Assembly: GCF_022045235.1 (NCBI RefSeq)
Contig: NW_027266297.1
Coordinates: 20,646,001-20,710,000, forward strand
Source of the DNA: Haliotis cracherodii
Taxonomy: Eukaryota
Direction: 5' to 3'
Length of the DNA stretch: 64,000 bases
Shown: positions 9,235 through 49,014 of the stretch, piece after piece
How positions within the stretch are numbered: the stretch's first letter is position 1
Layout of the letters: each line of letters starts with the position of its first letter
The notes under the pieces: generated by a model
What the model was told of the DNA's origin: nothing
Databases searched by the model: none
The model's input: the letters and a program-made list of their open reading frames with translations, nothing else
Program-made: the position numbers and the translations under genes

Positions 9235-10358
9235 GGCGGGGTCGCAGTGTCTAGCACGACTTTTGACCTTGACCTTTATTGTCCGTTGACAGCAAACGCT
9301 ATATCTGGGCCGTATGAACGAATATGATTTGGGTTATCAGATGGATGAAATAAATGATTTGTTTGTACGTTTTATTGCCTTTTTCCTTGGTGACTTACAG
9401 AGATATTTCAATTGATGATCTTAAAAAAAAGTCCCTTCATTAAAATTAACTGGCTGGAAGACTATTGAAAATTCATTTAATAATCATAGACAGATTTTAC
9501 TTTGATGACGAGAAGCTAATTCACACCAAGTCTGTTATTGAAATGTACAATATTGTACATAAGTATAAACAATTTTGCTAACTTAAATATTTTCGAAGGT
9601 ATGTACCTTGATACGTTATATTACGTTTCCTTAAGAGCCAAGATGTATTCCCTTGAACAGTATTTATTATAAGATTATTAGTTTCCCTTTGACATTCTAG
9701 CGATTATTTTCATAATATTCTGTACGCTAGTTTTTTTGGTTAATTTACAAAAATGTGTTTTGTATAACGCAGCTTGAAACAGTATTTAAGTTATTTTATG
9801 GTGTCTCAGTTTTATGTGAGATGAAAACCAAAGTGATGCATGTCTCAGATGTTGACAAATAAGTAAACACTCGATCACGGGGATATGACGTCGGCAAACC
9901 AAACACCAACTAAAACTTACGACCACAGGACTCCTATTCGGTGAAGTAATAGTATGATGTACACACAAGCTGCTTCTAACTAATAAACATAAGTCGCATC
10001 AAATAAACAGAGGGTGCCCTAAAAAATATCGTCCACCTCTCGCGCAAACACATGCACAGAAACACATTACCTACCCCGAACTAAACACTAATACCGTTAT
10101 ATTATCGACATGCACCTGAATCTTATAAGGATAGCCCTCATCCAGTTTGATAGAATTAACTTGACACTCACCAATATCACACTCTTTGACGTTTAAGCGT
10201 TAACAAAAGACAGATATTTCAAAATAAGAATATAATTTTATTATGATATAAGAATCCCCGGAAGATGTTGAAGTGTACCAAAATAATACATTATAAAGTG
10301 TTATACATCATGGTATGTTATCCACATATTATATGCAAGTTACCGCCAGTGATGTGAT

Positions 10359-10963
10359 GCTGATATCTCAACTCGCGTGTTGCCATGGTTAATAGGGCGA
10401 GTGATTGATTCCAGGTTGTCGTACACGGCCATACTGATGGAGTTGCCTTGTGTAGGCGACGTCACAACGACGTGGATTGCTCCCGAAGGAGGCGTCAACA
10501 TAAACACGGGACGTTGGGAGGAGGAGACGGTGAGATCAGTCAGGCTCTCGCTGTTAGGTAGCGTATCCATGAAGGTTGCCCCTTACACCCACTGAAAGTG
10601 ACTCCTACCGCCTCGAAGCATGTTTTTTCCCCCGCGAGATAGTCGTAGCCTAGGTCGTAGCAAGCAGCAAGACGTCACATGGTCCTTCCACAAAGGTCGT
10701 TGAACGACCCCAAGGAGATGATGTTTACTTTGGAAAGCACTCGAACACTTCTGATTGGCCTATTGTTTTTCTTTGCGATCTGATGGCGTGGTTGAACCAT
10801 TTTATATAACCATACGCGCAGGTATGGTGCTAAGGTTGTTCCAATTTGTACCATGGTTTAAGTCCACCACTTTGACTTAGGCGTTTTCCAGAGCGCAGGT
10901 GGAGCCACTGACGATGGTGTTGAAGCGGAGAAGAGGTACGCCATACACGTATTTGCCGACCCT
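10359..10963 (-). pseudogene. Degenerate M4 protease copy (3' part), internally deleted and 5'-truncated
   Basis: Nucleotide homology to 18570-19670 (e.g. [43 protein letters not shown]); frameshifts; TAC>TAA stop at about 10878; about 500 bp including HELAH missing at about 10800. Confidence 0.9.
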
Positions 10964-10964
10964 C

Positions 10965-11800
10965 TCGTTGCAGACGGACTATTGGTGAGGCTGTGGACGC
11001 GGCTATGAATGTAAGGACGGAGACGCTGAGATACCTGTGTAACCAAGGACGGGGTTCCCCTACTACATCAGACTACCACCACCAAATAGTCCACTCTCTG
11101 TATGCAGTTTCGTGCATAACGTTGCTTGCCACGCCTGTAAACACGACTTCTACCATCCACACGGCGAAGCATAAAACGTGACTCGTCAGTAAGCCAAACT
11201 TGTCACCATCACAGTTGTGGCCATACTCTGTGACCTTGACACCATTGTCGTCGCAGCAGACGATGCAGGCTCATCAAAATGACACCTCGAACTGGTCGTC
11301 TAGCACGAATACCTACAGCGCTTAAACGGTTCCTCACTATCTGGGCTGATATCATGCGCAGTCGTGGGCCCACTTGCACAAAACGACCTTAGCGCTGCGA
11401 CTATTGTCAGCCTATGTTAAAGTATGGGCGTTACGATATCATCTGAGTGCTAAGATCGCTCTGTGCAAGTATTGCCGTAGTTGTAGCGGTGGTCATGGTG
11501 TCTTTCACGCAAGTGACGTAGCCGTAGAAATCTGTCCTGTGCTCTAGTAGTGACACGTGGTCAACCGGATCTGGCAAGGTCACGTGTTGCCCCGTGTGTC
11601 GTCTCCAAACGGTTTCACAGTAATGGTGCTTGGTGCTACGTTGAAAACCCTGGCTTCAGCTGAAGATGATTCTCCTCTTTGCAGTTGGCCTATGTCGTTG
11701 TTGCGTTCCGTAAGTCGTGGCATGTTTTCGCTGTTCACTTGCGGTAAAATTGTGATGGCATGCATATGAAAACCCAACGTTTTTAATAGCACAACAGGTG
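10965..11800 (-). mobile_element. Degenerate Tc1/mariner transposon fragment
   Basis: Minus-strand remnants MPRLTERNNDIGQLQ..ARVFNVAPSTI, RSG*PRVTTRAQDRFLRLRHLRER, DESRFMLRRVDGRSRVYRR. Confidence 0.85.
11372..11470. mobile_element. About 100-bp palindromic MITE-like element nested in the Tc1 relic
   Basis: ACTTGCACAAAACGACCTTAGCGCT ... AGTGCTAAGATCGCTCTGTGCAAGT inverted repeats; related copy at about 60815-60915 (CTATGTTAAGGTATGGGAGTTACGA core). Confidence 0.7.
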
Positions 11801-18477: not shown

Positions 18478-20797
18478 TCATTCATACGTGATTTGAACGT
18501 TGACGTCAGTGATGTCGTTACCCGATTCAGCAGATACACGCAGGTACAGCGACGGGGACCCAGATGGAAGCTGATATCTCAACTCGCCTGTCGCCATGGC
18601 TAGTGGGGCGGGTGATTCCAAGTTGTCGTACACGGCCATGTTGATGGAGTTGCCTTGTGTAGGTGACGTCACAACGACGCGGGCTGCTCCCGATGGAGGC
18701 GTCAACATAAACACGGGACGATGGGAAGAGGAGACGGTGAGACCAGTCAGGGTCTCGCTGTCAGATAACGTCTCCATAAAGGTCGGCTCCTGACACCCAC
18801 TGAAAGTGATTCCTACCACCTGGAAGGATTTTTTTACCTCCAGATAGTCGTAACCGAGGTCGTAGCAAGCACGCATGACGCCACAAGCGCCTTCCTCAAA
18901 GGTCGTTGATCGAGCCCAGTAGATGACGTTAGCTCTGAGGAAGCATTCGAACGCTTTTCTGATGGGCATTTTGTTGACCTCCACGAGCTGGTAGAAGGCG
19001 TGGTTGAAGATGCCGCTGCTGTAGTGAACGTCGACGTTGTTGTTGTAGTCTCTGGTGTGCTTGAGTGAACCCCCATCTCGAGAAGGATCTTGAAAGTAAC
19101 GCAGGGCCCCATTGCTGCTTTTAAAGATTTCAGCTCCAACGAACCAGTCGTTAGAGCCACGAGCAAACATCTCAGTTGTCTCCCCTGTTATATCCGAGAA
19201 GGCTTCGTTGATACCACCAGACTGATCGTCGTAGATGAGGTTGGAGTTTTGTTCGGTGACACCATGGGCAAGTTCATGAGCAATAACGTCTTGGTTAACC
19301 AGTGGGTAGAAAGTGCTTCGACCATCGCCGAAAGTCAGGCTGCTGCCGTCCCAGAAGGCGTTCTCGTAGTTCCTGCTGTAGTGAACAAAGAGCACTGGCT
19401 TAAAGTTGAGGGGAGTCATCGTGTACCATTCGATAAACATACGGGCTGATTTGGTGCCAAAGTTCATGGCGTCCAGAACGGGGGAGTAAGCACCGTTGAT
19501 GGCGTCGTCATAACCGTTGGCACATGTGTAGGAAGAGGCGGCGCGGTTGTTCCTATTTGTACCCTGGTTTAAGTCCACCACTTTGACGTAGGCGTTTTCC
19601 AGAGTGCATGTGGCGCCACTGACGGTGGTGTTGAGGCACAAAGGAGGAACGCCATAAACGAACTTTCCAACTTTAAGATTTCCACCCTCCCCTTTAGCAG
19701 TATTGCCGCAGGTTGTTGGGCCTGCTGTTGTTGGTGCAGCTGTTGTTGGTCTTGGTGTTGTTGGTGCGGCTGTAGTGGGGCCTGCCGTTGTTGGTGCGGC
19801 TGTTACGGATTCTTGAGTTTGTGGGTCTCCGCCACAACTGTCAGTTGTAGTTTCTGGTTCAGGTGTGGTGTTCTCGCCAGGACACTCATCATCCCCAGGA
19901 GACTGTCTTCGGTGTCGTACAACAGCTTGACGTCTCTCTACTGCTTTGTTCTGGATGTTGTTGAAGGAACGGACAGTGGTAAGGTCACAGGCGTCGATAA
20001 AGTAGCAAGGACGGCTGGGTCTGTTGCCCTTCATGTAAAAGAAGTTGATCTCATAGGTCAGACGAGCCACGCCGTCCTTCTTGACGTAGACGTTCTTCTT
20101 GACGTTGACTTTGGTGACTTGAGACGCTCGGACCCCCTCCTGTGTGAAAGCTACCCTCTTGACGGTGTCATGTGTCTGCTCACAATCCTCAGGGTTGGGA
20201 ATATCTTCCTCCAGTGATGTGAAAAGTTCACCGCTGACGACGCCTGTGTAACCTAGGCTGGGGTTGACGTCGGCTGCCACGCTCCCTCCCACTACTTCCA
20301 GACCACCATAGGTCTGCTGTAGACGTTGCTTGATCTTGCCTCGCACTGTCTTGAGGGATTCCCCGGGGACGATAGCGCTTATGCCGCGCAGCCCCAACTC
20401 TGCACGCAGTTCCTCACGAGTGGCGTGGAAATGAGACCGAAGCTTCAAACGTCGAGTGATGCCAGCAACGTTAAAGCGACGTGCGGCCTCAGTCGTGTAC
20501 ACTGTGAGGGACAGCAGTCCTGAAAAACGAAGTAAAGTAGAATATATCAGATATCTATTTGAAACCTCAAATTGATATTACATGAAACCCGTTTTCTATT
20601 CCTTTCTAATTTTTACTCTGAATGCAATTTGATTGAAATGAATTACGTTGCAATTAATATCTAGTCAGCGAAATTGTACGATGGATGCATTTATTCTGAC
20701 ACGGAAAGTCCCCGTTCCAACACAATGACTGGGAGCATATATGTGTCTTCATATAATGTTACAATTACTTACCCAGCAGGATGATTTGACACTTCAT
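18478..20797 (-). CDS. Peptidase M4 (thermolysin/vibriolysin/LasB-like) preproprotein, copy 1; exons 20797-20773 and 20519-18478
   Basis: Exon 1 ATGAAGTGTCAAATCATCCTGCTGG|GTAAGT; acceptor cgtttttcag|GA; gives signal [23 protein letters not shown]-like ([13 protein letters not shown]) and PepSY-like (YFIDA) propeptide; [37 protein letters not shown] (19278-19264), [23 protein letters not shown]; C-terminal PPC-like domain. TATATAA 20849-20843; ATTAAA 18435-18430. Confidence 0.95.
20703..20713 (-). promoter_or_regulatory. Canonical NF-kappaB site in intron 1 of M4 copy 1
   Basis: GGAAAGTCCCC on + = GGGGACTTTCC on the coding strand; variants in copies 2-4. Confidence 0.4.
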
Positions 20798-21165
20798 GTT
20801 GTCCTCAAGTGTATGAGATGACCAGTGACCAATAGCCTGGACTTATATACACATGGACATCACGAAACACGCACCTGTCCTCATATTAATTTGTCCGAGA
20901 ACAATGCATAATATCATAACCCCAGGACATAATCTCATACGCCACACTCCGCTCTTGTGTTACAAAGCACAAAGATACTCGATACATAAGACACGTGCGG
21001 ATTACATAAGTTTCTCATCATTTGTACGTGCTGGGGGAAATATGTACGATCTGTTTGTGCTGTCATTAGTGATAACAGCTATAGTCCTCCAGCATGACAA
21101 CGCTAGAACCATGCATTCTGGTAAACTGACACGGGAGTTCCTCATCAACATGAAAGTTATTATAT

Positions 21166-22700
21166 ATACTCGTCAAAAAAGGAGGGGGCCATGAAATATA
21201 AATATTAATATCAAGCATAAGAACAAATATAAGTGTTGACGACCAACATCTTGTTCAAGAAAGTTTATGTCTGTAAAATTTAACACCAAAACACATCCTA
21301 TAGTTGGCACGTGCCTCACGATGAAGCTCCAACCACGTGCTTAGGGTGTCATTCCTGACATTGACACCTTCCTGGAAGTTTAACTAATCTGTGGGTCTCA
21401 TACGTTCTGTCAATTCTATTGATTCTGCGTATCGATTTACTTGTTCACCTTCATTTTTAGTGTGTGAATAGCATCTTCGGGCTATTTTCATGCTGGGAAC
21501 AGGTAGCGCGCAACGTTGAATATTTCAGCCTGTGATTAGCAGACTATGGAACAGATGCCTACAAACCCAAAATGTTGACGATCGACCCGTTCAGGGTGTC
21601 CCAGGGCAACGACAAGAGTACAGGATCGATTGATCCTAAACCCGGCTCTACGAAATTGAACTCAAACGGTGACTCAAATTGCTGCATACTTTCATCAGAC
21701 TACTGGACTACGAGTTAGTGAGTGAGTGAGTGAGTTGGGTTCTACGCCGCTTTTAACAGTATGCCAGTTATATCCCGGCGTGTCAGGTTAATGTGGGAGG
21801 AAAGCCCCAAGTGATGCAGGTCTCAAACGTTTGCCACTTCGGTAAAACCCATGAGCACGGGTATGGTGCTGACAAACCTAGAAATATAATCGGGGCGAAC
21901 TGGGATTCGAACCAACTTTGGTTTCTAGCGTGCCAAAGGGACGCAACTCTGCACAGCGAATCGCGGACTGGGCACCCGTGCCCCCTATTGCCAACAGGCG
22001 TCAAAGATATAGACAACGTCAAATTGGGGTAATCATCGTTGGTCACGTGTCATGTTTTCACATGAGTCTCGATTCACTTTGATAGGCATGATCGCGTCTG
22101 ACTTCCTTGATATGCGTGGTCGTGTCTGGCGACGTCGAAAGTCAATATAAACCTGAGACCTCATGGCAGATTTGGGGGTTGATCGGTTGTGGTGTGGGGT
22201 GGTATCACTATAACTGAGCGAACCCCACTCCATATTGTGAAGGAAGGGTCACTGAACAGTACCATCGGGACAACATACTGTCACCCTTTTTCCCCGTTTG
22301 CAAGGCGTGTGGGTCGACGTTTCGTCTTTTAGGACGACAACGCTGTGTTCACCATGCACGAATTGACAATGCTCTCCCCAAGCAGCACAACGTCCATAGA
22401 CTGCCTGGCAGCACTGATTCATGACCTTTCCCTCACTGAACACGTCTGGGACATGATAGGAAGACGTGTGCGTGATAGGTCGCTGACCACGTTGGCTGAA
22501 CTTGGCCAGGCGCTGCAAGAAGAGTGGGACAAACTCCCTCAAATCGCCATTCGGAGACTCATACGCATAAACACCTCGTCAAGTGAATGAAAGTTTGACA
22601 AATCGTAGCGGTATTACGCACGACTGATCCAAAAACGTCAACTTTGAAACTTTGGTCACATCTTACACCTAGCGGTCATAACATCCGCTGTACGACAACT
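21166..22700 (+). mobile_element. Degenerate Tc1/mariner element interrupted by a SINE
   Basis: TA-TACTCGTCAAAAAAG-type terminus; transposase remnants incl. ESRF, VVVWGGI, DDNA, DLSLTEHVWDMIGRRVRDR...LQEEWDKLPQIAIRRLI. Ends approximate. Confidence 0.75.
21717..21984 (-). mobile_element. tRNA-derived SINE (family S2) with (ACTC)n tail
   Basis: Minus strand: GGGTGCCCAGTC A-box-like, GGTTCGAATCCC B-box, body shared with 7290-7465, tail of (GAGT)n on +. Confidence 0.85.
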
Positions 22701-24452
22701 ACCGGTTGTAATGTGTCCCAAATTGGTTCATTATTATCATATACTAGTATAAGATAGCTGCGTGATAAATCGCAAAGAATAATGAAGAACGAAGCTTGGT
22801 GTACTCGTATTTCACGATAAAACATTGTTCTATCATGACGCCATTTCTGGAGACTCGAATATGCGCTCGAAACTTGTTGACATCATATATTGGACGATGT
22901 TATTATTGAGAGGGAAGTGTCTAGTAAGTTCTTCCCATAGATGTAGCTGGGCTACGCAAGTAAACGCAGTGGCCGAACAATCGCATCCAAAAGGCGGGAG
23001 AGATATGACAATCGGTATTGGGAGTAAAAGGTACAGATAATCGACGTGAGACTATGCGGGAAATACCAAACTGAACCCCATCTGTTCGTAAAATGGACTT
23101 GTCCGACATTTCCTTTGTCGGAATCTATTCAGAGAGGCATCATTATTATAATTTTGGTAAATATATTTTAACCTGGTACATTTTATCAGCATCCTTAAAG
23201 ATGCACCCTCATGGTTTATTCTCCCTGCAGTGTTTTATTGTACGATAAACAACTCCCACTCGTCGTTTATTTCTTAAACACTGTACAACTCTTACTAGCA
23301 ACAAATATCTCATAGGGTTATGGAAATTTGAAGTTATGTCCGCATATAATAATGTTTTTCCATGGCCTGCATGTTCATCTGACATGAACCCCATCGAACA
23401 TTTGAGAGATCATCTTAACAGGCAAGGCAGAAGGCGACCGGTACCGACAGTCAGTCGTTAGGAACTGGAGTGGTGTAAATATACTAGCATATGAAGACAA
23501 AAACCAATCCACACTCTAGCATCTTATAGGTAATTAACTGTAAGTGACGTGAAAGCAAGGGAGACAGGCGAGTCTGTAGATTCACATCCCTATATAACCT
23601 TACAGGATGTCTAGGAGGATTTTATGTAAGATTTTTATGTTTTTGAAATAAACATCCATCCTGTAATTAAAACTAACCATGTTTTTCTGTATTTAGTGCT
23701 GTCTTTTTCAACGTGATGACTCATGCTTAATGTGACCACGGATACTTTGAAGCAAGGGACATTTGGTGCGGAACTGGGAGTAATGTGTTTAGCTTCCGGT
23801 ACTTGGAAAAGGAGCTGGCTCACCTAGTCAATTTCGTTGTTTTTATTGCTGCTCTAAGGCCAAACTGTGCACACACGTAGAGGTAATAGCTTTTTAATGA
23901 TTCGTTATTTTTAAAATAAATATAACGTGACTATAGGAGTCAATGGGAAAACATTTGTTTGTGTGTAACCTCTAAAGGCTCAACAATTATTTCCCTTTGT
24001 TATGAACACAACATGCCGCTAGGATAAAGTAGATTCCTTTGAAAAAGGACGAAAAAACATTTATCATGAAATAAACTTGATTATTAATCATATTTAAAGC
24101 AGTCTCTTCATCACTTATCTCAGAAAGATGACCAAACATAAATAACGGGAGCATAGCATGGGTGAGTGAGTGAAATGTTAATAACGTCGAAGATAAACTA
24201 ACGGGCAAAAGAAACGCAACCAAATCATTTTCTGGTCTAAAACAAAAAAGACGCAAAATTTAGTAACAGTTGATGTTTAATTATGAAAAAAACACAATTA
24301 TTCAAAAACGGTATTTGAAAATGACAAGATCAAAGACCGTGTACTTAAAGTTTTACAGACACGTTTATCATGCTGGGTGCACTGTCCAGTATTCGATCGC
24401 ACCCACAGAATCGACGCCGATCTCTTTTCAAGTCCCGTGCTACACACATGGC

Positions 24453-37934: not shown

Positions 37935-39304
37935 GTTGTCCTCAAGTGTATGAGATGACCAGTGACCAGTAGCCTGGCCTTATATACACCATGGACATCA
38001 CGACACACGCACCTGTCCTCATTAATTTGTCCGAGAACAATACATAATATCATAACCCCAGGACATAATCTCATACGCCACACTCCGTTCTTGTACTACA
38101 AAGCACAAAGATACTAGATACATAAGACACGTGCTGATTACATAAGTTTCTCATCATTTGTACGTGCTGGTGGAAAATATATATGTAATCATTACTTGTT
38201 ATCTCTAAACATCAGCAACGTAGTGTAAACACTGTCAGCGGGTGTGCCTTGTTTTCAAAAATATGTTTCTAGCCTATCTCAGATCCCGGGTTACACGGGT
38301 GGCCCAGTCGCACCGTACTTCGTTGTGCAGAGCTTCGTAACAGAATCACACCAAAAAACTAAAATAGGGTTCGAATCTCAGATACGTTTTGATATGTTAC
38401 TCGGTTTGTCGGCACCATACCCGTGCTCGTCGATTTCACCAAAGTAGTAAACGTCTGGGACCTTCACTTCAGGATTTCCTCCCACATCAAGCTGACACGA
38501 TGTAACATAACAGAAGATGTTGAAATTGACGAACATCCCAAGTCACTCTATCTTTAGTCACTTAGCTATATAAAAACCTGTATAAAGGGGTTAACCATTG
38601 GTACTACTATAGGACAATAAACGACGGTTGTTAATAACCTTGAATATAGGCCAGTGTACGAGAATATGATGAAATTTAAACAAAGGATGTATGACTGTCT
38701 TTCTCAAAACTGGCATCTCTTCATGGAGCTCTCATCTAAATGCAAATATTACTCACAGTACAAATATCTCCTTTATATGGAAAAAAACTTATTATCATGT
38801 GAAATATCTGCTTATCATAAAAGATCAATATGTATGTTCAGGTGTAACAACTTTAAACTTGCATTTGAAACTGGAAGACATTCTAAAATCCCATATGAAG
38901 AACGTGTGTGCGTGTATTGCCACTCCAAAGGTTTAACTCTAATTGAGGATGAGTATCATGTATTGTCAATCTGTGACAGATACCGAGCTGCAAGAAGAGA
39001 ATGCTTTGCTGAAAGTGAAATCAACTTTACCACATTTCAACAGTTTTTAAACCTTATGTCAACAAACTCCACAAGAACTTTAAAACACATTGGACTATTC
39101 TTACCCAAAGATATGAATATACGTATCTCATCACTGTTCTAACGTATTCTAAAACTATTTGTCTTAACATAACGCCATAGTATATAAGCATGTATGATCT
39201 ACATTATGTCAACATGTATTATGGGCTGGAGGCCTGATTACTGAATAAATCTGTCTGTCTGTCTGTCTGTCTGTACGAGAATAGTCTATCATCACGAACG
39301 TTAG

Positions 39305-42130
39305 GGGCAAAACGAGGATGGTCTATAAGCTTGAAAATTGGACAATACACCTGGATGGTATATAAGCTTGAAGATTTGTCGATAAACGAGGGTAGTGTGT
39401 AAGATTGAAGATTGGACAATACACGTGGATGGTCTATAAGCTTGAAGACTGGACAATAAACGTGGAGGGTCTATAAGCTTGAAGGCTACACAATAAACGA
39501 GGATGGTCTATAAGCTTGAAGATTGGACAAAAAACGTGGATGGTTTATAAGCTTGAAGACTACACAATAAACGAGGATGGTCTATAAGCTTGAAGACTGG
39601 ACAATAAACGAGGATGGTCTATAAGCTTGAAGGCTACACAATAAACGAAGATGGTTTATAAGCTTGAAGATTGGACAGTAAACGAGGATGGTCTATAAGA
39701 TTGAAGACTACACAATAAACGAGGATGGTCTATAAGCTTGAATGCTACACAATAAACGAGGATGGTCTATAAGGATGAAGATTGGACAATAAACGAGGAT
39801 GGTCTATAAGCATGAAGATTGGGCAATAAACGAGGATGGTCTATAAGCATGAAGATTGGACAATAAACGAGGATGGTCTATAAGCATGAAGATTGGACAA
39901 TAAACCTGGATGGTCTATAAGCTTGAAGGCTACACAATAAACGAGGATGGTCTATAAGCTTGAAGATTGGACAATAAACGAGGATTGTCTATAAGCATGA
40001 AGATTGAACAATAAATGAGGATCGTCTATAAGATTGAAGACTACACAATAAACGAGGATGGTCTATAAGCTTGAAGGCTACACAATAAACGAGGATGGTC
40101 TATAAGCTTGAAGACTACACAATAAACGAGGATGGTCTATAAGCTTGAAGATTGGACAAAAAACGAGGATCGTCTATAAGATTGAAGACTACACAATAAA
40201 CGAGGATGGTCTATAAACAAGAAGATTGGACAATAAACGAGAATGGTCTATAAGCTTGAAGATTGGGCAATCAACGAGGATGGCCTATAAGCTTGAAGAC
40301 TACACGATCAACGAGGATGGTCAATAAGCATGAAGACTGGACAATAAACGAGGATGGTCTATAAGCATGAAGATTGGACAATAAACGAGGATGGCCTATA
40401 AGCTTGAAGACTACACAATAAACGAGGATGGTCTATAAGCGTGAAGGCTTCACAATAAACGAGGATGGTCTATAACCATGAAGATTGGACAATAAACGAG
40501 GATGGTCTATAAGCTTGAAGACTACACAATAAACGAGGATGGTCTATAAACAAGAAGATTGGACAATAAACGAGGATGGTCTATAAGCATGAAGATTGGA
40601 CAATAAACGAGGATGGTCTATAAGCATGAAGATAGGACAATAAACGAGGATGGTCTATAAGTATGAAGACTACACAATAAAACGAGGATGGTCTATAAGA
40701 TTGAAGACTGCACAATAAACGAGGGTGGTCTATAAGCTTGAAGATTGGACAATAAACGAAGATGGTCTATAAGCATGGAGATTGGAAATAAACGAGGACG
40801 GTCTATAAGGATGAAAATTGGAAATAAACGAGGATGGTCTATAGGCTTGAAGACTACACAATAAACGAGGATGGTCTATAAGCTTGAAGATTGGACAATA
40901 AACGAGGACGGTCTATAAGCCTGAAGATAGGACAATAAACGAGGACGGTCTATAAGCATGAAGATAGGACAATAAACGAGGATGGTCTATAAGTATGAAG
41001 ACTACACAATAAAACGAGGATGGTCTATAAGATTGAAGACTGCACAATAAACGAGGGTGGTCTATAAGCTTGAAGATTGGACAATAAACGAAGATGGTCT
41101 ATAAGCATGGAGATTGGAAATAAACGAGGATGGTCTATAAGGATGAAAATTGGAAATAAACGAGGATGGTCTATAGGCTTGAAGACTACACAATAAACGA
41201 GGATGGTCTATAAGCTTGAAGATTGGACAATAAACGAGGACGGTCTATAAGCCTGAAGATAGGACAATAAACGAAGATGGTATATAAGTATGAAGACTAC
41301 ACAATAAACGAGGATTGTTTATAAGCTTGAAGATTGGACAATAAACGAGGATGGTCTATAAGCTTGAAGACTACACAATAAACGAGGGTTGTCTATAAGC
41401 TTGAAGATTTGACAATAAACGAGGATGGTCTATAAGCTTGAAGGCTACACAATACACGAGGATGGTCTATAAGCTTGAAGATTGAACAATAAACGAGGAT
41501 TGTCTATAAGCAAGAAGATTGGACAATAAACGAGGATGGTCTATAAGCTTGAAGATTGGACAGTAAACGAGGATGGTCTATAGGCTTGAAGATTGGACAA
41601 TAAACGTGGATGACCTTTAAGCTTGAAGATTGGACAATAAACGAGGATGGTTTATAAGACCACACAATAAACGAGGGTTGTCTATAAGCTTGAAGGCTAC
41701 ACAATACACGAGGATGGTATATAAGCTTGAAGATTGAACAATAAACGAGGATTGTCTATAAGCATGAAGATTGGACAATAAACGAGGATGGTCTATAAGC
41801 TTGGAGATTGGACAATAAACGAGGATGGTCTATAGGCTTGAAGATTGGACAATAAACGTGGATGACCTTTAAGCTTGAAGATTGGACAATAAACGAGGAT
41901 GGTCTATAAGCATGAATATTGGACAATAAACGAGGATGGTCTATAACCATGAAGATTGGACAATAAACGAGGATGGTCTATAAGCATGAAGATTGGACAA
42001 TAAACGAGGATGGTCTATAAGCTTGAAGACTACACAATAAACCTGGATGGTCTATAAACTTGAAGATCGCACAATGAACGTGGATTGTCTATAAGCTTGA
42101 AGAGTGGACGATAAACGAGGATTGTCTAAA
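39305..42130. repeat. 37-bp minisatellite, about 76 units
   Basis: Same unit as 31522-32428. Confidence 0.95.
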
Positions 42131-44095
42131 AGCAACCCTGGTAAAGATACAGACACTAAAAATCTAAGATACAAATTAAACGCAACCAATATTATAAATT
42201 TTTCAAAAAGTCTACCAAAAAAATAAAAATAAGAATAAGTTAAATATTTTTTAAAGAAACAATTATTGAAAGACAACAAATTCTAAGAAAAAGATCCTTA
42301 ATAGATGAAAAAATCATTGAACTACAGTAGGTTAGGGTTATAAGGGACTCAAAGGGGCCACTCATTTCAGTACGTTATAACCGTAGTTTGTTATAAGCAC
42401 ATGCAGTAAATGTACAGGAAATGATCGGAACAAAAAAATAGGTTCGTTATATCCGTCAGTTCGTTATACACTTAGTTTACTGTATTCTGAAACTGAACTG
42501 AGGTGTAACGTGGCACAAATCGTATCACTGGCTATCCATTGGCAGGAGAAAGGAACTATATTTTTATCCTTAAACTAGTTGAGGTTAGTTTTGTTTAATT
42601 GGTTGTTTGTTTTCATTTTCATTTTTCTGTATATCCGATGATAAACTGGACACAATTAAGTCATACAAAACCATGCCACAAACATGTGAAATTAAATTAA
42701 GAGTCTAATGTCATGCATGAGGACCCATTGCTTCATATCAACCAGTGATTGGGAATTGACAAATTGGTTAGAACACCCTACCCTCATGTGTAAAATTAAT
42801 AAAACATAAGAGTGAGTGAGTGAGTGAGTGAGTATGGTTTTACGCCACTTTTAGCAATATTCCAGCAATATCACGACGGGGGACACCAGAAATGGGCTTC
42901 ACACATTGTAACCATATCGGGAATCGAACCCGGGTCTTCGGCGTGACGAGCGAACGCTTTAACCACTAGGTTACCCGATCGCCCTAATACATAAGAGAAC
43001 ATTTAACCATGACACCACATGTGTGAGTATGTGTGTGTCTCGGTTTGTGTGCGTGCGTGCTTGAGTATGTGTGCGTAAGTGTGAATGCGTGTGCGTATAT
43101 TGGAGCAAACAAACCGCGTTGTGTGAGTTGCTTCCACATGTCGTCTGGCCTTGATTAGTTTGAAAAAAGTAAAAGCTACGGACATCTCATGATTTGGTTC
43201 GTTATGATTTCGAAGTATTCAACCATGTAGTAAAAATAGCGATGGTAAGTATTCTATAGCATCGATAGATGTAAAGATAACTTGGGAACATGTGGTACAA
43301 GTCAAAAAAGGGAATAGCGTCGGACATCAGTTTTGTCACTGATGGTCCTATTTGGAAATGTCCTCCACATCAAACGTTTTTAAACCTCTACATGAGACCT
43401 TGATGGTTTTAACCTTGATCAAACAACAATAGTCGTAAAACCTAAAAACACGTTTCTTGTTTGACGAGACTCGTGACGCGCTATACTTTTGTTATAGAAG
43501 AGAAGTAATAATATTTCCCTCACTGAACATGCAATGCCTTTCCCTCGAAAGCTGGAGCCGAAGAATCTTTTCAATTGTTCAAAACACATTTTTTTGAGGC
43601 CATCAAGTATATCTGCGGACAATTTTTTTTTTTCAATTTTAAAGCAATTTCTGTATTAAGTAATCAATAAATAGATGCCCTTGTCTTTAATTGTATGCGA
43701 ACACACATGGAAGAGTCGACGAGGCAGTGAAGAAACCCTGTTTTGGTATTGCGTGTATTATGTTATTGTGTATAATGTTAATATAAAGCTCATGGAAACG
43801 ATCCTATTTAAAGTATTGTTATTATCAACTACACGTAGATCACATGTTAATTTACTTATGCGTGGAGTATATTTTGAGTGAGTGAGTGAGTGAGTGAGTG
43901 AACAGGGACATGGCGCTTACAAGCCGATGATCCCAATCAGGGCGAAGCTATGTTTTGAAGCCAACATTGTCGGATCATGCCATGCCGAAGGCTCACAAGT
44001 GCTGCGAATAGCTTCAGGCGATTGGGCCTCCCGTGTCCCCATACACCGGCTACATCAATATTACTAAGCAATAGTATATCTCCTGTTAAAATATC

Positions 44096-44260
44096 GGGGC
44101 GGTCGGGTAGCCTAGTGGTTAAAGCGTTCGCTCGTCACGCCGAAGACCCGGGTTCGATTCCCGACATGGGTACTGTGTGTGAAGCCAATTTCTGGTGTCC
44201 CCCGCCGTGATATTGCTGGGATATTGCTAAAAGCGGCGTAAAATAATATTCACTCACTCA
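44096..44260 (+). mobile_element. Young S1 SINE with 13-bp TSD (duplicate of 35300-35464)
   Basis: TSD CTGTTAAAATATC at 44083-44095 and 44261-44273. Confidence 0.95.
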
Positions 44261-44380
44261 CTGTTAAAATATCACGATGATAATATTTTTTTCATTTCAT
44301 GAAAAACAACTTGAATTTCAACTTGTATATACTTTAATCAATGAAAGCTACAGGGCATATTTTCTGTAATGTATTGACGA

Positions 44381-46730
44381 TCATTCATACGTGATTTGAA
44401 CGTTGACGTCAGTGATGTCGTTACCCGATTCAGCAGATACACGCAGGTACAGCGACGGGGACCCAGATGGAAGCTGATATCTCAACTCGCCTGTCGCCAT
44501 GGCTAGTGGGGCGGGTGATTCCAGGTTGTCGTACACGGCCATGTTGATGGAGTTGCCTTGTGTAGGTGACGTCACAACGACGTGGGTTGCTCCCGATTGA
44601 GGCGTCAACATAAACACGGGACGATGGGAGGAGGAGACGGTGAGACCAGTCAGGGTCTCGCTGTCAGATAACGTCTCCATGAAGGTCGGCTCCTGACACC
44701 CACTGAAAGTGATTCCTACCACCTGGAAGGATTTTTTTACCTCCAGATAGTCGTAGCCGAGGTCGTAGCAAGCACGCATGACGCCACAAGCGCCTTCCTC
44801 AAAGGTCGTTGATCGGCCCCAGTAGATGACGTTAGCTCTGAGGAAGCATTCGAACGCTTTTCTGATGGGCATTTTGTTGACCTCCACGAGCTGGTAGAAG
44901 GCGTGGTTGAAGATGCCGCTGCTGTAGTGAACGTCGACGTTGTTGTTGTAGTCTCTGGTGTGCTTGAGTGAACCCCCATCTCGAGAAGGATCTTGAAAGT
45001 AACGCAGGGCCCCATTGCTACTTTTAAAGATTTCAGCTCCAACGAACCAGTCGTTAGAGCCACGAGCAAACATCTCAGTTGTCTCCCCTGTTATGTCCGA
45101 GAAGGCTTCGTTGATACCACCAGACTGATCGTCGTAGATGAGGTTGGAGTTTTGTTCGGTGACACCATGGGCAAGTTCATGAGCAATAACGTCTTGGTTA
45201 ACCAGTGGGTAGAAAGTGCTTCGACCATCGCCGAAAGTCAGGCTGCTGCCGTCCCAGAAGGCGTTCTCGTAGTTCCTGCTGTAGTGAACAAAGAGGACTG
45301 GCTTGAAGTTGAGGGGAGTCATCGTGTACCATTCGATAAACATACGGGCTGATTTGGTGCCAAAGTTCATGGCGTCCAGGACGGGGGAGTAAGCACCGTT
45401 GATGGCGTCGTCATAACCGATGGCACATGTGTAGGAAGAGGCGGCGCGGTTGTTCCTATTTGTACCCTGGTTTAAGTCCACCACTTTGACGTAGGTGTTT
45501 TCCAGAGTGCATGTGGCGCCACTGACGGTGGTGTTGAGGCACAAAGGAGGAACGCCATACACGAACTTTCCAACTTTAAGATTTCCACCCTCCCCTTTAG
45601 CAGGATTGCCGCAGGTTGTTGGGCCTGCTGTTGTTGGTGCAGCTGTAGTTGGTCTTGGTGTTGTTGGTGCGGCTGTAGTTGGTCTTGCTGTTGTTGGTGC
45701 GGCTGTAGTTGGTCTTGGTGTTGTTGGTGCGGCTGTTACGGATTCTTGAGTTTGTGGGTCTCCGCCACAACTGTCAGTTGTAGTTTCTGGTTCAGGTGTG
45801 GTGTTCTCGCCAGGACACTCATCATCCCCAGGAGACTGTCTTCGGTGTCGTACAACAGCTTGACGTCTCTCTACTGCTTTGTTCTGGATGTTGTTGAAGG
45901 AAAGGACAGTGGTAAGGTCACAGGCGTCGATAAAGTAGCAAGGACGGCTGGGTCTGTTGCCCTTCATGTAAAAGAAGTTGATCTCATAGGTCAGACGAGC
46001 AACGCCGTCCTTCTTGACGTAGACGTTCTTCTTGACGTTGACTTTGGTGACTTGAGACGCTGGGACCCCCTCCTGTGTGAAAGCTACCCTCTTGACGGTG
46101 TCATGTGTCTGCTCACAATCCTCAGGGTTGGGAATGTCTTCCTCCAGTGATGTGAAAAGTTCACCACTGACGACGCCTGTGTAACCGAGGCTGGGGTTGA
46201 CGTCGGCGGCCACGCTCCCTCCCACTACTTCCAGACCACCATAGGTCTGCTGTAGACGTTGCTTGATCTTGCCTCGCACTGTCTTGAGGGATTCCCCGGG
46301 AACGATAGCGCTTATGCCACGAAGCCCCAGCTCTGCACGCAGTTCCTCACGAGTGGCATGGAAATGAGACCGAAGCTTCAAACGTCGAGTGACGCCAGCA
46401 ACGTTGAAGCGACGTGCGGCCTCAGTCGTGTACACTGTGAGGGACAGCAGTCCTGAAAAACGAAGAAAAGTAGAATATATCAGATATCTATTTGAAACCT
46501 CAAAGTGATATTATATGAAACCCGTTTTTCATTCCTTTCTAACTTTCACTTTGAATGCAATTTGATTGAAATAAATAACGTTGAAATTTATATCTAGTCC
46601 GCGAAATTGTACGATGAATGCGTTTATTCTGATAGAGAAAGTTCCCGTTCAAAAACCATTACTTGGAGCATATATGTGTCTTAATATAATGTTACAATTA
46701 CTTACCCAGCAGGATGATTTGACACTTCAT
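44381..46730 (-). CDS. Peptidase M4 preproprotein, copy 4; exons 46730-46706 and 46452-44381
   Basis: Same structure and catalytic motifs; intact frame. Confidence 0.95.
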
Positions 46731-48036
46731 GTTGTCCTCAAGTGTATGAGATGAACAGTGACCAGTAGCCTGGCCTTATATACACCCATGGACATCTCAA
46801 CACACGCACCTGTCCTCATATTAATTTGTCCGAGAACAATACATAATATCATAACCCCAGGATATAATCTCAAACGCCACACTCCGTTCTTGTGCTACAA
46901 AGCACAAAGATACTCGATACACAGGCATGCACGTGCGGATTACATAAGTTTCTCATCATTTGTACGTGCTGGTGGAAAATATATATGTAATTATTACTTG
47001 TTATCTCTAAACATCAGCAACGTAGTGTAAACACTGTCAGCGGGTGTGCCTTGTTTGCAAAACAATGTTTCTAGCCTATCTCAGATCCCGGGTTACACGG
47101 GTGGCCCAGTCGCACCGTACTGAGCTTAGTAACAGAGTCACACCAAAAAACTAAAATAGGGTTCGAATCTCAGATACGTTTTGATATGTTACTCGGTTTG
47201 TCGGCACTATACCCGTGTCTCGTCGATTTCACCAAAGTAGTAAACGTCTGGGACCTTCACTTCAGGATTTCCTCCCACATCAAGCTGACACGATGCAACA
47301 TAACAGAAGATGTTGAAATTGACGAACATCCCAAGTCACTCTATCTTTAGTCACTTAGCTATATAAAAACCTGTATAAAGGGGTTAACCATTGGTACTAC
47401 TATATGACAATGAGCGACAGTTGTTAATAACCTTGAATATAGGCCAGTGTACGAGAATATGATGAAATTTAAACAAAGGATGTATGACTGTCTTTCTCAA
47501 AACTGGCATCTCTTCATAGAGCTCTCATCTAAATGCAAATATTACTCACAGTACAAATCTCTCCTTAATGTAGAAAAATACTCATGTGAAATATCTGCTT
47601 ATTATAAAAGATTAATATTTATGTTCAGGTGTAACAACTTTAAACTTGCATTTGAAACTGGAAGACATTCTAAAATCCCATATGAAGAACGTGTGTGCGT
47701 GTATTGCCACTCCAAAGGTTTAACTCTAATTGAGGATGAGTATCATGTATTGTCAATCTGTGACAGATACCGAGCTGCAAGAAGAGAATGCTTTGCTGAA
47801 AGTGAAATCAACTTTACCACATTTCAACAGTTTTTAAACCTTATGTCAACAAACTCCACAAGAACTTTAAAACACATTGGACTATTCTTATCTAAAGATA
47901 TGAATATACGTATCTCATCACTGTTCTAACGTATTCTAAAACTATTTGTCTTAACATAACGCCATAGTATATAAGCATGTATGATCTACATTATGTCAAC
48001 ATGTATTATGGGCTGGAGGCCTGATTACTGAATAAA

Positions 48037-48069
<33 letters not shown>

Positions 48070-48102
48070 ACGAGAATAGTCTATCATCACGAACGTTAGG
48101 GG

Positions 48103-48825
48103 CAAAACGAGGATGGTCTATAAGCTTGAAAATTGGACAATACACCTGGATGGTATATAAGCTTGAAGATTTGTCGATAAACGAGGGTAGTGTGTAAGAT
48201 TGAAGATTGGACAATACACGTGGATGGTCTATAAGCTTGAAGGCTACACAATAAACGAGGATGGTCTATAAGCTTGAACATTGGACAAAAAACGTAGATG
48301 GTTTATAAGCTTGAAGGCTTTACAATAAACGTGGATGGTTTATAAGCTTGAAGACTACACAATAAACGAGGATGGTCTATAAGCTTGAAGACTGGACAAT
48401 AAACGTGGATGGTCTATGAGCTTGAAGGCTACACAATAAACGAGGATGGTTTATAACCTTGAAGGCTACACAATAAACGAGGATGGTCTACAAGCTTGAA
48501 GATTGGACAATAAACGAGGATGGTCTATAAGCATGAAGATTGGACAATAAACGTGGATGGTCTATAAGCTTGAAGACTTCACAATAAACCTGGATGGTCT
48601 ATAAGCATGAAGATTGGACAATAAACGAGGATGGTCTATAAGCTTGAAGACTTCACAATAAACATGGATGGTCTATAAGCATGAAGACTGGACAGTAAAC
48701 GAGTATGATCTATAAGCGTGAAGACTACACAATAAACCTGGATGGTCTATAAGCTTGAAGATCGGACAATAAACGTGGATTGTCTATAACCTTGAAGATT
48801 GGACAATAAACGAGGATTGTCTAAA
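48103..48825. repeat. 37-bp minisatellite, about 19-20 units
   Basis: Same unit as above. Confidence 0.95.
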
Positions 48826-49014
48826 AGCAACCCTGGTAAAGATACAGACACTAAAAATCTAAGATATAAATTAAACGCAACCAATATTTTAGAATTTACA
48901 AAAAGTCTACAAAAAATAAAATTATGAATAAGTTAAATATTTTTTAAAGAAACAATCATTAAATGACAACAAATACTAAGAAAAAGATCCTTAACAGATG
49001 ATGATTTGAAATAA

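What the first reader, a model, noticed from the sequence alone, without database searches (positions are those of the whole stretch)
18478..46730. Domesticated bacterial-type M4 metalloprotease amplified as a tandem gene array in an animal genome
Seen: four intact copies with FTP/PepSY-like propeptide, complete catalytic motifs (HELAH, NEAFSD, DVHYSSG) and a PPC-like tail, embedded among SINEs, LINEs and Tc1 elements. Known: M4 is a mainly bacterial family; GxGGNxKxGxxxYG, NGAYSP and LRYFxxPSxDG are signatures of the Gram-negative vibriolysin/LasB subgroup rather than Bacillus thermolysin. Inference: ancient horizontal transfer from a (gamma)proteobacterium followed by expansion, with a possible role in mucus, digestion, matrix remodelling or antibacterial defence. 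Automated annotations of such genes may exist in molluscs; I cannot check novelty.
Basis: partly seen in the sequence, partly recalled or inferred. Interest (0 to 1): 0.9.

Follow-up and report, generated by a model that had tools for sequence, protein, structure and literature searches.

The report
Bacterial-type M4 protease genes in abalone
Four nearly identical, expressed copies of a secreted zinc protease of a mainly bacterial family (M4, vibriolysin type) lie head-to-tail in an abalone chromosome; they belong to a mollusc-wide gene family that most likely began as one old gene transfer from a proteobacterium.

Summary
Four intact M4 metalloprotease genes (98-99% identical) lie in tandem on the minus strand at 18478-46730, and a decayed fifth copy lies at about 10351-10969. 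Each gene has a TATA-like box, a 25-nt first exon, a 241-253-nt phase-1 GT-AG intron inside the signal peptide, one long exon and an ATTAAA poly(A) signal. Transcriptome contigs from other runs cover only the exons, join exon 1 to exon 2 and end in poly(A). The copies are under purifying selection (dN/dS 0.10-0.18). The fold is an FTP/PepSY-type propeptide, a disordered Pro/Thr linker, a vibriolysin-like catalytic domain (TM 0.97 to MCP-02) and a β-domain that is PPC-like by fold only. The genome, very likely Haliotis cracherodii, has 13 intact paralogues. Every named eukaryotic homologue I saw is a mollusc (gastropods, bivalves, cephalopods). They form one clade (100/97-98) inside the proteobacterial vibriolysin-type radiation, far from the Bacillus and Streptomyces M4s. 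The donor is unresolved: an AU test does not reject simple sisterhood to the sampled bacteria. RefSeq already carries automatic names for these genes. Nine literature searches found no paper on them. Tissue and substrate are unknown. This is a well-supported new example of a known kind of event.

The parts
18478..20519 (-). Copy 1, exon 2 (stop codon included): end of the signal peptide, propeptide, Pro/Thr linker, catalytic domain, β-tail
   Evidence: ORF; Pfam; 3' splice site ...tttttcag|GA read
20520..20772 (-). Copy 1 intron, 253 nt, GT...AG, phase 1, inside the signal peptide
20773..20797 (-). Copy 1 exon 1, 25 nt, encodes MKCQIILL plus the first base of Gly
   Evidence: matches the N-terminus of RefSeq protein P0001
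20842..20850 (-). TATA-like box GTATATAAG, 45-53 nt upstream of the ATG; also at 30261-30269, 37979-37987 and 46775-46783
   Evidence: function inferred
27856..27920 (-). Copy 2 3'UTR, 65 nt, with ATTAAA at 27873-27878; poly(A) is added at 27856
   Evidence: an RNA contig ends at 27856 followed by 23 T on the + strand; sequence read
27921..29962 (-). Copy 2, exon 2 (stop codon included)
   Evidence: RNA contigs cover 27856-29963 only
29963..30203 (-). Copy 2 intron, 241 nt (12-nt deletion relative to the other copies)
   Evidence: no depth in runs X1, X3, X5, and a contig runs from 29963 straight into exon-1 letters
30204..30228 (-). Copy 2 exon 1
   Evidence: its reverse complement is the loose end of the X3 contig
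35585..37656 (-). Copy 3, exon 2, with one extra 30-nt linker repeat ([10 protein letters not shown])
37657..37934 (-). Copy 3 intron (37657-37909) and exon 1 (37910-37934)
44381..46452 (-). Copy 4, exon 2, with the extra linker repeat
46453..46730 (-). Copy 4 intron (46453-46705) and exon 1 (46706-46730)
10351..10969 (-). Decayed fifth copy: fragments matching residues 275-319 and 499-630, in three different frames with stop codons; 84-85% DNA identity to the live copies
39310..42133 (.). 37-bp satellite, about 77 copies, upstream of copy 3; shorter arrays at 31525-32426 (about 24 copies) and 48105-48828 (about 20 copies) upstream of copies 2 and 4; part of the duplicated unit
24476..25350 (-). 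Decayed Tc1-like transposase (HTH_Tnp_Tc3_2 and DDE_3 in two ORFs) between copies 1 and 2
   Evidence: both scores are below the Pfam cut-offs

Best explanation
This is a tandem array of four functional nuclear genes in an abalone. Each encodes a secreted zymogen of a vibriolysin-type M4 zinc endopeptidase. The gene family most likely entered a mollusc ancestor once from a proteobacterium, and it then gained a eukaryotic promoter, a 5' exon and an intron inside the signal peptide, and a poly(A) signal. It has since duplicated many times; this array is a recent local amplification. Inferred mechanism of the protein: the signal peptide directs it into the secretory pathway. The FTP/PepSY-type propeptide folds and inhibits the enzyme until it is removed, by autoprocessing and/or at the RHRR site that precedes the linker. 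The Pro/Thr-rich linker is probably O-glycosylated. The catalytic domain (zinc ligands H409, H413, E433; general base E410; H493 and Y424 as transition-state helpers) cuts peptide bonds outside the cell. The diverged PPC-like β-domain either binds a substrate or matrix, or is trimmed off as in bacterial vibriolysins. Shown here: gene structure, transcription, splicing, polyadenylation, purifying selection, fold, and a single mollusc clade. Inferred: enzyme activity, processing, glycosylation and biological role. My best guess at the role is extracellular digestion or mucosal proteolysis, but the tissue is unknown.
For: Four intact copies with all M4 motifs. Eukaryotic gene anatomy conserved in all four. 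Contigs of runs X1, X3 and X5, from two studies and two species labels, cover only 27856-29963, run into exon-1 letters at 29963 and into a T-run at 27856, and have no depth in the flanks or the intron. dS is 0.03-0.06 with dN/dS 0.10-0.18 among the copies; against the C45 cluster dS is 0.70 and dN/dS 0.18. The model has pLDDT 83.5 and pTM 0.85. The catalytic domain matches MCP-02 at TM 0.97 and rmsd 1.0 Å, the propeptide at TM 0.79, and the tail matches a PPC domain at TM 0.68. The window sits at 20.6 Mb of a contig in a 1.18-Gb assembly that holds 13 intact paralogues. Orthologues lie on 67-73-Mb contigs of other Haliotis assemblies. The same phase-1 intron, 10-12 residues before the signal-peptide cleavage site, occurs in four divergent paralogues from both major subclades. 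The named eukaryotic hits are all molluscs. The mollusc clade has support of 100/97 and 100/98, and Bacillus and Streptomyces are separated from it at 100/99.
Against: The AU test does not reject all sampled ingroup bacteria forming one group (p 0.94), so nesting among them is not shown and the donor is unresolved. With long-branch sequences added, two Legionella M4s attach next to the animal clade; support is weak (81/98) and the tool flags a possible artefact. Each protein search lists only its best 120 hits, so M4 genes in non-mollusc animals could have been missed. An unnamed, eukaryote-like sister family might be molluscs, another phylum, or a second transfer. The run kind is only guessed as RNA; the poly(A) tail, the splice and the exon-only cover make the case. 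No activity, tissue or protein data exist.
Confidence: 0.85

Rival explanations
1. The M4 genes are bacterial contamination or a mis-assembly, not abalone DNA.
For: The coding sequence has 53% G+C against 41% for the window, and the protein is 48-54% identical to gammaproteobacterial enzymes.
Against: All copies have a spliceosomal intron, a TATA-like box and an ATTAAA signal. Transcripts are spliced and polyadenylated. The genes are interleaved with a Tc1-like element and a satellite. They lie 20.6 Mb into a chromosome-scale contig. Orthologues occur in four other Haliotis assemblies. No bacterial genome comes closer than about 54% identity.
Confidence: 0.01
2. Vertical descent: an old eukaryotic M4 gene was kept in molluscs and lost nearly everywhere else.
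For: The AU test allows the mollusc clade to be the sister of all sampled proteobacterial vibriolysins. An unnamed, eukaryote-like sister family exists.
Against: Every named eukaryotic hit is a mollusc. The mollusc enzymes are far closer to proteobacterial vibriolysins (about 50% identity, 300+ bits) than either group is to Bacillus or Streptomyces M4s (28-35%, 100-120 bits). The whole bacterial domain order is kept. There is only one intron, and it lies outside the bacterial-derived body of the gene.
Confidence: 0.05
3. Several independent transfers: different mollusc lineages, or the two subclades, each took an M4 gene from bacteria separately.
For: There are two deep subclades, one holding only gastropods. 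The position of the environmental sequences P0022 and P0099 changes with sampling.
Against: All molluscs form one clade at 100/97-98 with no named bacterium inside it. Both subclades share the phase-1 intron in the signal peptide. They also share a motif straight after the signal peptide, A-A-R-[RK]-V-[DN]-A, that the sampled bacterial precursors lack.
Confidence: 0.06
4. The array is transcribed but no longer makes a working protease, for example dead copies or a binding protein.
For: No activity or protein data exist. A dead fifth copy lies next to the array.
Against: All zinc ligands and catalytic residues are invariant across 22 mollusc-type sequences. The reading frames are intact, dN/dS is 0.10-0.18, and the catalytic domain is modelled with high confidence.
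Confidence: 0.03

Closest known systems
Vibriolysin MCP-02 (Pseudoalteromonas; PDB 3nqx, 3nqy, 3nqz) and PlM4P (7ecc)
   Same: Catalytic domain 47-51% identical, TM 0.97, rmsd 1.0 Å. The propeptide has the same fold (TM 0.79). Same zinc-binding and catalytic motifs.
   Different: The abalone gene has a eukaryotic signal peptide split by an intron, a roughly 75-residue disordered Pro/Thr linker with an RHRR site between the propeptide and the catalytic domain, and one C-terminal β-domain that Pfam no longer recognises as PPC.
Pseudolysin (LasB) of Pseudomonas aeruginosa, HapA of Vibrio cholerae, ProA of Legionella
   Same: Same M4 subgroup: 279-296 bits to LasB and 241 bits to ProA, TM 0.87-0.95. 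HapA falls in the bacterial ingroup of the trees.
   Different: Those are bacterial secreted enzymes, and they autoprocess. This one is a nuclear animal gene family. Nothing here says what its substrates are.
Automatic RefSeq gene models in molluscs ('elastase-like', 'neutral protease-like', 'hemagglutinin/proteinase-like', 'virulence metalloprotease-like'; 'Pseudolysin' in Mizuhopecten)
   Same: These are the same family. H. rufescens LOC124136252 is 96% identical over its full length, and three paralogues of this genome are identical to H. cracherodii proteins in the catalytic domain.
   Different: They are names given by a pipeline. Nine searches found no paper that describes the family, its origin or its function.
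Phage lysozyme genes co-opted by bivalve genomes (PMC5303276)
   Same: A foreign hydrolase gene taken up by molluscs, kept and expressed (title and abstract seen).
   Different: A different enzyme, a different donor and a narrower host range (two bivalve subclasses). I read only the abstract.

Membership tests
Peptidase family M4 (thermolysin family) | Peptidase_M4 and Peptidase_M4_C domains above the Pfam gathering scores | tested here: met
   91-94 bits (cut-off 22.4) and 115-116 bits (cut-off 24.4) in all four copies
Peptidase family M4 (thermolysin family) | HEXXH motif plus a downstream Glu as third zinc ligand (NEXXSD), and the His and Tyr transition-state residues | tested here: met
   H409, E410, H413, E433, D437, Y424 and H493 are invariant in 22 mollusc-type sequences and align to the same residues of 7ecc
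Peptidase family M4 (thermolysin family) | Two-lobed thermolysin fold | tested here: met
   TM 0.97 to MCP-02 and 0.80 to thermolysin; catalytic domain pLDDT mostly above 90
Peptidase family M4 (thermolysin family) | N-terminal FTP/PepSY propeptide | tested here: met
   Borderline by sequence (FTP 20.9 bits against 21; PepSY E 0.13). Matches the MCP-02 propeptide by sequence at E 3.5e-7 and by fold at E 2e-10, TM 0.79.
Peptidase family M4 (thermolysin family) | Zinc-dependent endopeptidase activity inhibited by phosphoramidon or chelators | not testable with these tools
   Needs recombinant or native protein
Vibriolysin/pseudolysin subgroup of M4 | Closer to vibriolysin and LasB than to thermolysin or bacillolysin | tested here: met
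   304-321 and 279-296 bits against 104-123 bits; the trees separate Bacillus and Streptomyces at 100/99
Vibriolysin/pseudolysin subgroup of M4 | C-terminal PPC (pre-peptidase C-terminal) domain | tested here: inconclusive
   No Pfam PPC match at E up to 1. The fold matches PPC 5sv5 at E 9e-4, TM 0.68, and the ColG/ColH collagen-binding domains at TM about 0.6. The related environmental sequence P0022 keeps two clear PPC domains (6e-33).
Gene acquired by an animal through horizontal transfer from bacteria | Physically part of a host chromosome | tested here: met
   The window is at 20.6 Mb of a contig of a 1.18-Gb assembly. The genes are flanked by a Tc1-like element and a satellite. Orthologues lie on 67-73-Mb contigs in other Haliotis.
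Gene acquired by an animal through horizontal transfer from bacteria | Eukaryotic gene features and expression | tested here: met
   Intron, TATA-like box and ATTAAA signal; spliced, polyadenylated contigs; dN/dS 0.10-0.18
Gene acquired by an animal through horizontal transfer from bacteria | Recipient clade nested among donor-group sequences in a tree | tested here: inconclusive
   The clade lies inside the proteobacterial-type radiation relative to the Bacillus/Streptomyces root (100/99). However, the backbone is a polytomy and the AU test does not reject the ingroup bacteria as one group (p 0.94).
Gene acquired by an animal through horizontal transfer from bacteria | Absent from the recipient's wider relatives (other animals) | tested here: inconclusive
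   All named eukaryotic hits in three searches are molluscs. Only the best 120 hits are listed per search, and about 20 clusters from unnamed ENA assemblies remain unidentified.

The most novel reading that the evidence does not exclude
A single bacterial vibriolysin gene, complete with propeptide and PPC domains, entered the germ line of an early mollusc or an even earlier lophotrochozoan. It picked up a host 5' exon and intron for secretion and became a large, fast-duplicating family of secreted proteases. The family spans gastropods, bivalves, cephalopods and at least one further, still unnamed animal lineage. In abalone it is among the strongly expressed secreted enzymes. That would make it the first documented phylum-wide domestication of an M4 'virulence-type' protease by animals.
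Probability: 0.45. Interest if true: 0.7.

Novelty: new member of a known kind. Interest (0 to 1): 0.55.

Why it matters
M4 proteases are usually described as almost exclusively bacterial (abstract of PMC7851659, seen), and they are best known as secreted virulence factors of Vibrio, Pseudomonas and Legionella, including pathogens of shellfish. Here the same enzyme type is a normal, expressed and selected gene family of the animals that those bacteria infect. This gives a clean case for studying how a bacterial gene is fitted with a eukaryotic promoter, secretion signal, intron and poly(A) site, and how it then expands. It raises a practical point for abalone and shellfish work: protease activity, transcripts or peptides of 'vibriolysin type' found in mollusc samples need not come from bacteria. 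It also opens testable questions about mollusc digestion or mucosal defence.

Tried and rejected
A scan of bacterial and archaeal genomes with P0172 found no relative. A scan of JGI metagenome contigs with P0022 found nothing. The protein atlas returned only bacterial M4 clusters.

(2) A Pfam PPC match in the tail: none was found.

(3) Showing that the mollusc clade is nested among named bacteria failed: the AU test gave p 0.94. Adding Legionella, a Vibrio plasmid M4 and a PKD-type M4 only produced a weak Legionella attachment flagged for long branches. I do not read that as a Legionella donor.

(4) Literature: nine searches found nothing on mollusc M4 genes. The 'Peptidase_M4' hit in the Tara Oceans paper was Peptidase_M41. 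The cephalopod venom preprint mentions transfer only for another gene. The metazoan HGT compendium does not mention peptidases in its text, and its supplements are not held.

(5) Tissue of expression could not be determined, because run metadata are coded and give no tissue.

(6) A second, tail-only structure prediction was prepared (alignment A5) but not run, because the whole-protein fold search already gave the PPC match.

(7) The joined exon 1 + exon 2 protein was not sent to any tool. Exon 2 was searched by reference, and exon 1 (25 nt) is too short to search.

(8) The N run at 59627-59828 was left alone.


Full report
WHAT IS THERE. The region holds four long minus-strand open reading frames at 18478-20502, 27921-29945, 35585-37639 and 44381-46435. 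Their products are 98-99% identical. The main length difference is one extra 10-residue unit ([10 protein letters not shown]) in copies 3 and 4.

GENE STRUCTURE. The RefSeq protein of Haliotis rufescens that is 96% identical (P0001) starts 14 residues before the ORF. The DNA upstream explains this. In every copy there is a 25-nt first exon (ATG at 20797, 30228, 37934 and 46730). It is followed by a GT...AG intron of 253 nt (241 nt in copy 2) that splits a Gly codon in phase 1, inside the hydrophobic core of the signal peptide. A TATA-like box, GTATATAAG, lies 45-53 nt upstream of each ATG. Downstream of the stop codon, all copies keep an ATTAAA hexamer. The full coding sequences are therefore 688 residues (copies 1 and 2) and 698 residues (copies 3 and 4). 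I did not send the joined exon 1 + exon 2 protein to any tool. Exon 2 was always used by reference.

EXPRESSION. I laid Logan contigs of four public runs on copy 2 and its flanks. In three of them (X1 and X3 of one study and species label, X5 of another), the contigs cover 27856-29963 only, which is exon 2 plus 65 nt of 3'UTR. There is no depth in the 450 nt beyond the 3' end, in the intron, or upstream. At 29963 a contig of X3 continues with 16 letters that are the reverse complement of exon 1, so the intron has been removed. At 27856 another contig continues with 23 T on the plus strand, which is a poly(A) tail on the gene's strand, 17 nt after the ATTAAA. The runs are only guessed to be RNA, but these three features together are what mRNA looks like. 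The fourth run (X8) has thin cover that enters the intron, consistent with DNA or pre-mRNA. Word depths are in the hundreds to thousands, but contig depth is a poor measure of expression. No tissue is given.

THE ARRAY. A self-comparison shows a gene core of about 2.8 kb shared by all four copies at 95-98% identity. Copies 3 and 4 sit in a longer unit (35081-40032 against 43877-48827, 96.7%). Upstream blocks shared by copies 2, 3 and 4 include a 37-bp satellite of about 24, 77 and 20 copies. A decayed Tc1-like transposase lies between copies 1 and 2. A fifth copy at 10351-10969 is reduced to fragments in three frames with stop codons. Among the live copies dS is 0.03-0.06 and dN/dS is 0.10-0.18. 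This indicates recent duplication, or homogenisation, under purifying selection.

THE PROTEIN. An AlphaFold model built with 22 mollusc-type sequences has mean pLDDT 83.5 and pTM 0.85. It shows four parts:
- a folded propeptide;
- a disordered stretch at residues 187-260 (ORF numbering), which is the Pro/Thr-rich linker and begins just after an RHRR site;
- the catalytic domain;
- an eight-stranded β-domain.

The Foldseek search gave these matches:
- the catalytic domain matches vibriolysin MCP-02 at TM 0.97 and rmsd 1.0 Å, LasB at about 0.95, ProA at about 0.88 and thermolysin at about 0.80;
- the propeptide matches the MCP-02 propeptide chain (E 2e-10, TM 0.79);
- the tail matches a pre-peptidase C-terminal domain (5sv5, E 9e-4, TM 0.68) and the collagen-binding domains of clostridial collagenases.

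By sequence the propeptide is a borderline FTP match and the tail is not recognised as PPC. The zinc ligands and catalytic residues are invariant in all 22 sequences. The likely mechanism is therefore that of a secreted M4 zymogen. The linker and the dibasic site are additions made in the animal. Activity, processing and glycosylation are inferred, not shown.

THE GENOME AND THE FAMILY. The window is at 20.6 Mb of a contig in a 1.18-Gb, 80-contig assembly. Three paralogues of this genome are identical, in the catalytic domain, to RefSeq proteins of Haliotis cracherodii, so the genome is very likely black abalone. It holds 13 intact M4 genes:
- the four in this window;
- two divergent ones 3 kb and 16 kb beyond the window's end, on the other strand;
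- a cluster of four on another contig (78-79% identity; dS 0.70 to the window copies);
- three more distant ones.
It also holds several fragments. RefSeq models mapped onto four divergent paralogues show the same arrangement: a short first exon, then a phase-1 splice 10-12 residues before the signal-peptide cleavage site. Since these four span both major subclades of the family, the intron was probably gained before the family diversified.

ORIGIN. In a single-sequence search and in a profile search, every named eukaryotic hit is a mollusc:
- gastropods: Haliotis, Aplysia, Elysia, Babylonia, Pomacea, Batillaria;
- bivalves: three scallops, Tegillarca, Ruditapes;
- cephalopods: Octopus, Argonauta.
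The best bacterial hits are marine and freshwater Gamma- and Betaproteobacteria, at 45-57% identity over the catalytic half.

A catalytic-domain tree of 82 sequences (IQ-TREE, LG+C20 PMSF, careful search) places all molluscs and the unnamed mollusc-like sequences in one clade at 100/97. One subclade mixes bivalves, cephalopods and gastropods, and the other holds only gastropods. Bacillus and Streptomyces M4s are separated at 100/99. A second tree of 101 sequences with more bacteria gives 100/98 for the mollusc clade.

Two limits must be stated. First, the bacterial backbone is a polytomy, and an AU test does not reject a tree in which all 26 sampled ingroup bacteria form one group (p 0.94). 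The mollusc clade may therefore be the sister of these bacteria rather than nested among them, and the donor cannot be named more closely. Second, when long-branch M4s were added, two Legionella sequences attached next to the animal clade with weak support and a long-branch warning. I give that no weight.

The case for transfer therefore rests on four points taken together:
- the restriction of the family to molluscs among named eukaryotes;
- much greater similarity to proteobacterial vibriolysins than either group has to other bacterial M4s;
- retention of the whole bacterial domain order;
- the near absence of introns.

UNNAMED RELATIVES. The closest sisters of the mollusc clade are sequences without names. 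P0172 belongs to about 20 clusters, all from ENA assemblies with contigs of 0.45-3.5 Mb. Five paralogues of 62-76% identity lie on one 1.19-Mb contig. No bacterial or archaeal species genome encodes a relative close enough to be found. That pattern is what a eukaryotic tandem family looks like, so the animal radiation probably reaches at least one more lineage. It could be an unannotated mollusc group or another phylum.

P0022 and P0099 come from JGI contigs barely longer than the gene. They keep two clear PPC domains. They also share with scallop, clam, apple-snail and argonaut proteins a motif straight after the signal peptide (A-A-R-[RK]-V-[DN]-A, followed by basic residues) that the 25 bacterial precursors I looked at lack. 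Their position in the tree changes with sampling. If they belong to the animal radiation, the abalone tail is a worn-down PPC domain.

WHAT IS KNOWN. RefSeq and UniProt already carry automatic names for these proteins, so the genes themselves are on record. Nine full-text searches found no paper on M4 genes in molluscs, their origin or their function. The library does not cover subscription journals, so this is not proof of absence. Transfers of hydrolase genes into molluscs are known in principle, for example phage lysozymes in bivalves (PMC5303276). I therefore class this as a new member of a known kind: a well-documented, apparently undescribed case of a bacterial secreted protease domesticated across a phylum, with a recent four-copy amplification in abalone.

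VERDICT. Confidence in 'expressed, selected, transfer-derived M4 protease array' is 0.85. The biological role is open: extracellular digestion or mucosal proteolysis are my leading guesses, and neither was tested.

Noticed in passing
window 31525-32426, 39310-42133, 48105-48828: A 37-bp satellite (consensus starts AAACGNGGATGGTC...) in arrays of about 24, 77 and 20 copies. It always lies 1.3-1.6 kb upstream of M4 copies 2, 3 and 4, with strong G-over-C and A-over-T skew in the long array. It is part of the duplicated unit, and array length differs between units.
   Followed up: partly
G000:C34:20713171-20715132 and 20726632-20729088 (3 kb and 16 kb beyond the window's end, + strand): Two more intact M4 genes of a different, old subclade (39-41% identity; open frames of 708 and 892 residues). 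They point towards the array, so the locus is a larger M4 supercluster of old and young duplicates. RefSeq relatives of the longer one carry an extra N-terminal region; P0016 has a PF10106 hit.
   Followed up: partly
window 19700-19935 and the equivalent stretch in the other copies: The Pro/Thr linker is built of 30-nt in-frame repeats whose number differs between copies (3 or 4) and from the H. rufescens orthologue. An RHRR site lies just before it. In the C45 paralogues the site is weaker (ERRQ). This linker and site are absent from bacterial vibriolysins.
   Followed up: partly
proteins P0172, P0147, P0206-P0220 (ENA assemblies, unnamed): A second large M4 family with a eukaryote-like layout (several paralogues per megabase-scale contig) is the sister of the mollusc clade. 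The organism is unknown. The proteins have a longer C-terminal region of about 200 residues without Pfam matches.
   Followed up: partly
window 38654-39142 and 47447-47929 (+ strand): A 160-162-residue ORF is repeated in the units of copies 3 and 4 and has no Pfam match. It may be a chance ORF or a fragment of a mobile element.
   Followed up: partly
The two ORFs I scanned there gave no Pfam match.
   Followed up: no
window 24476-25350 (- strand): A decayed Tc1-like transposase, with its HTH and DDE parts in two separate ORFs, lies between copies 1 and 2. This shows that the spacers have diverged by insertion since the duplication.
   Followed up: partly
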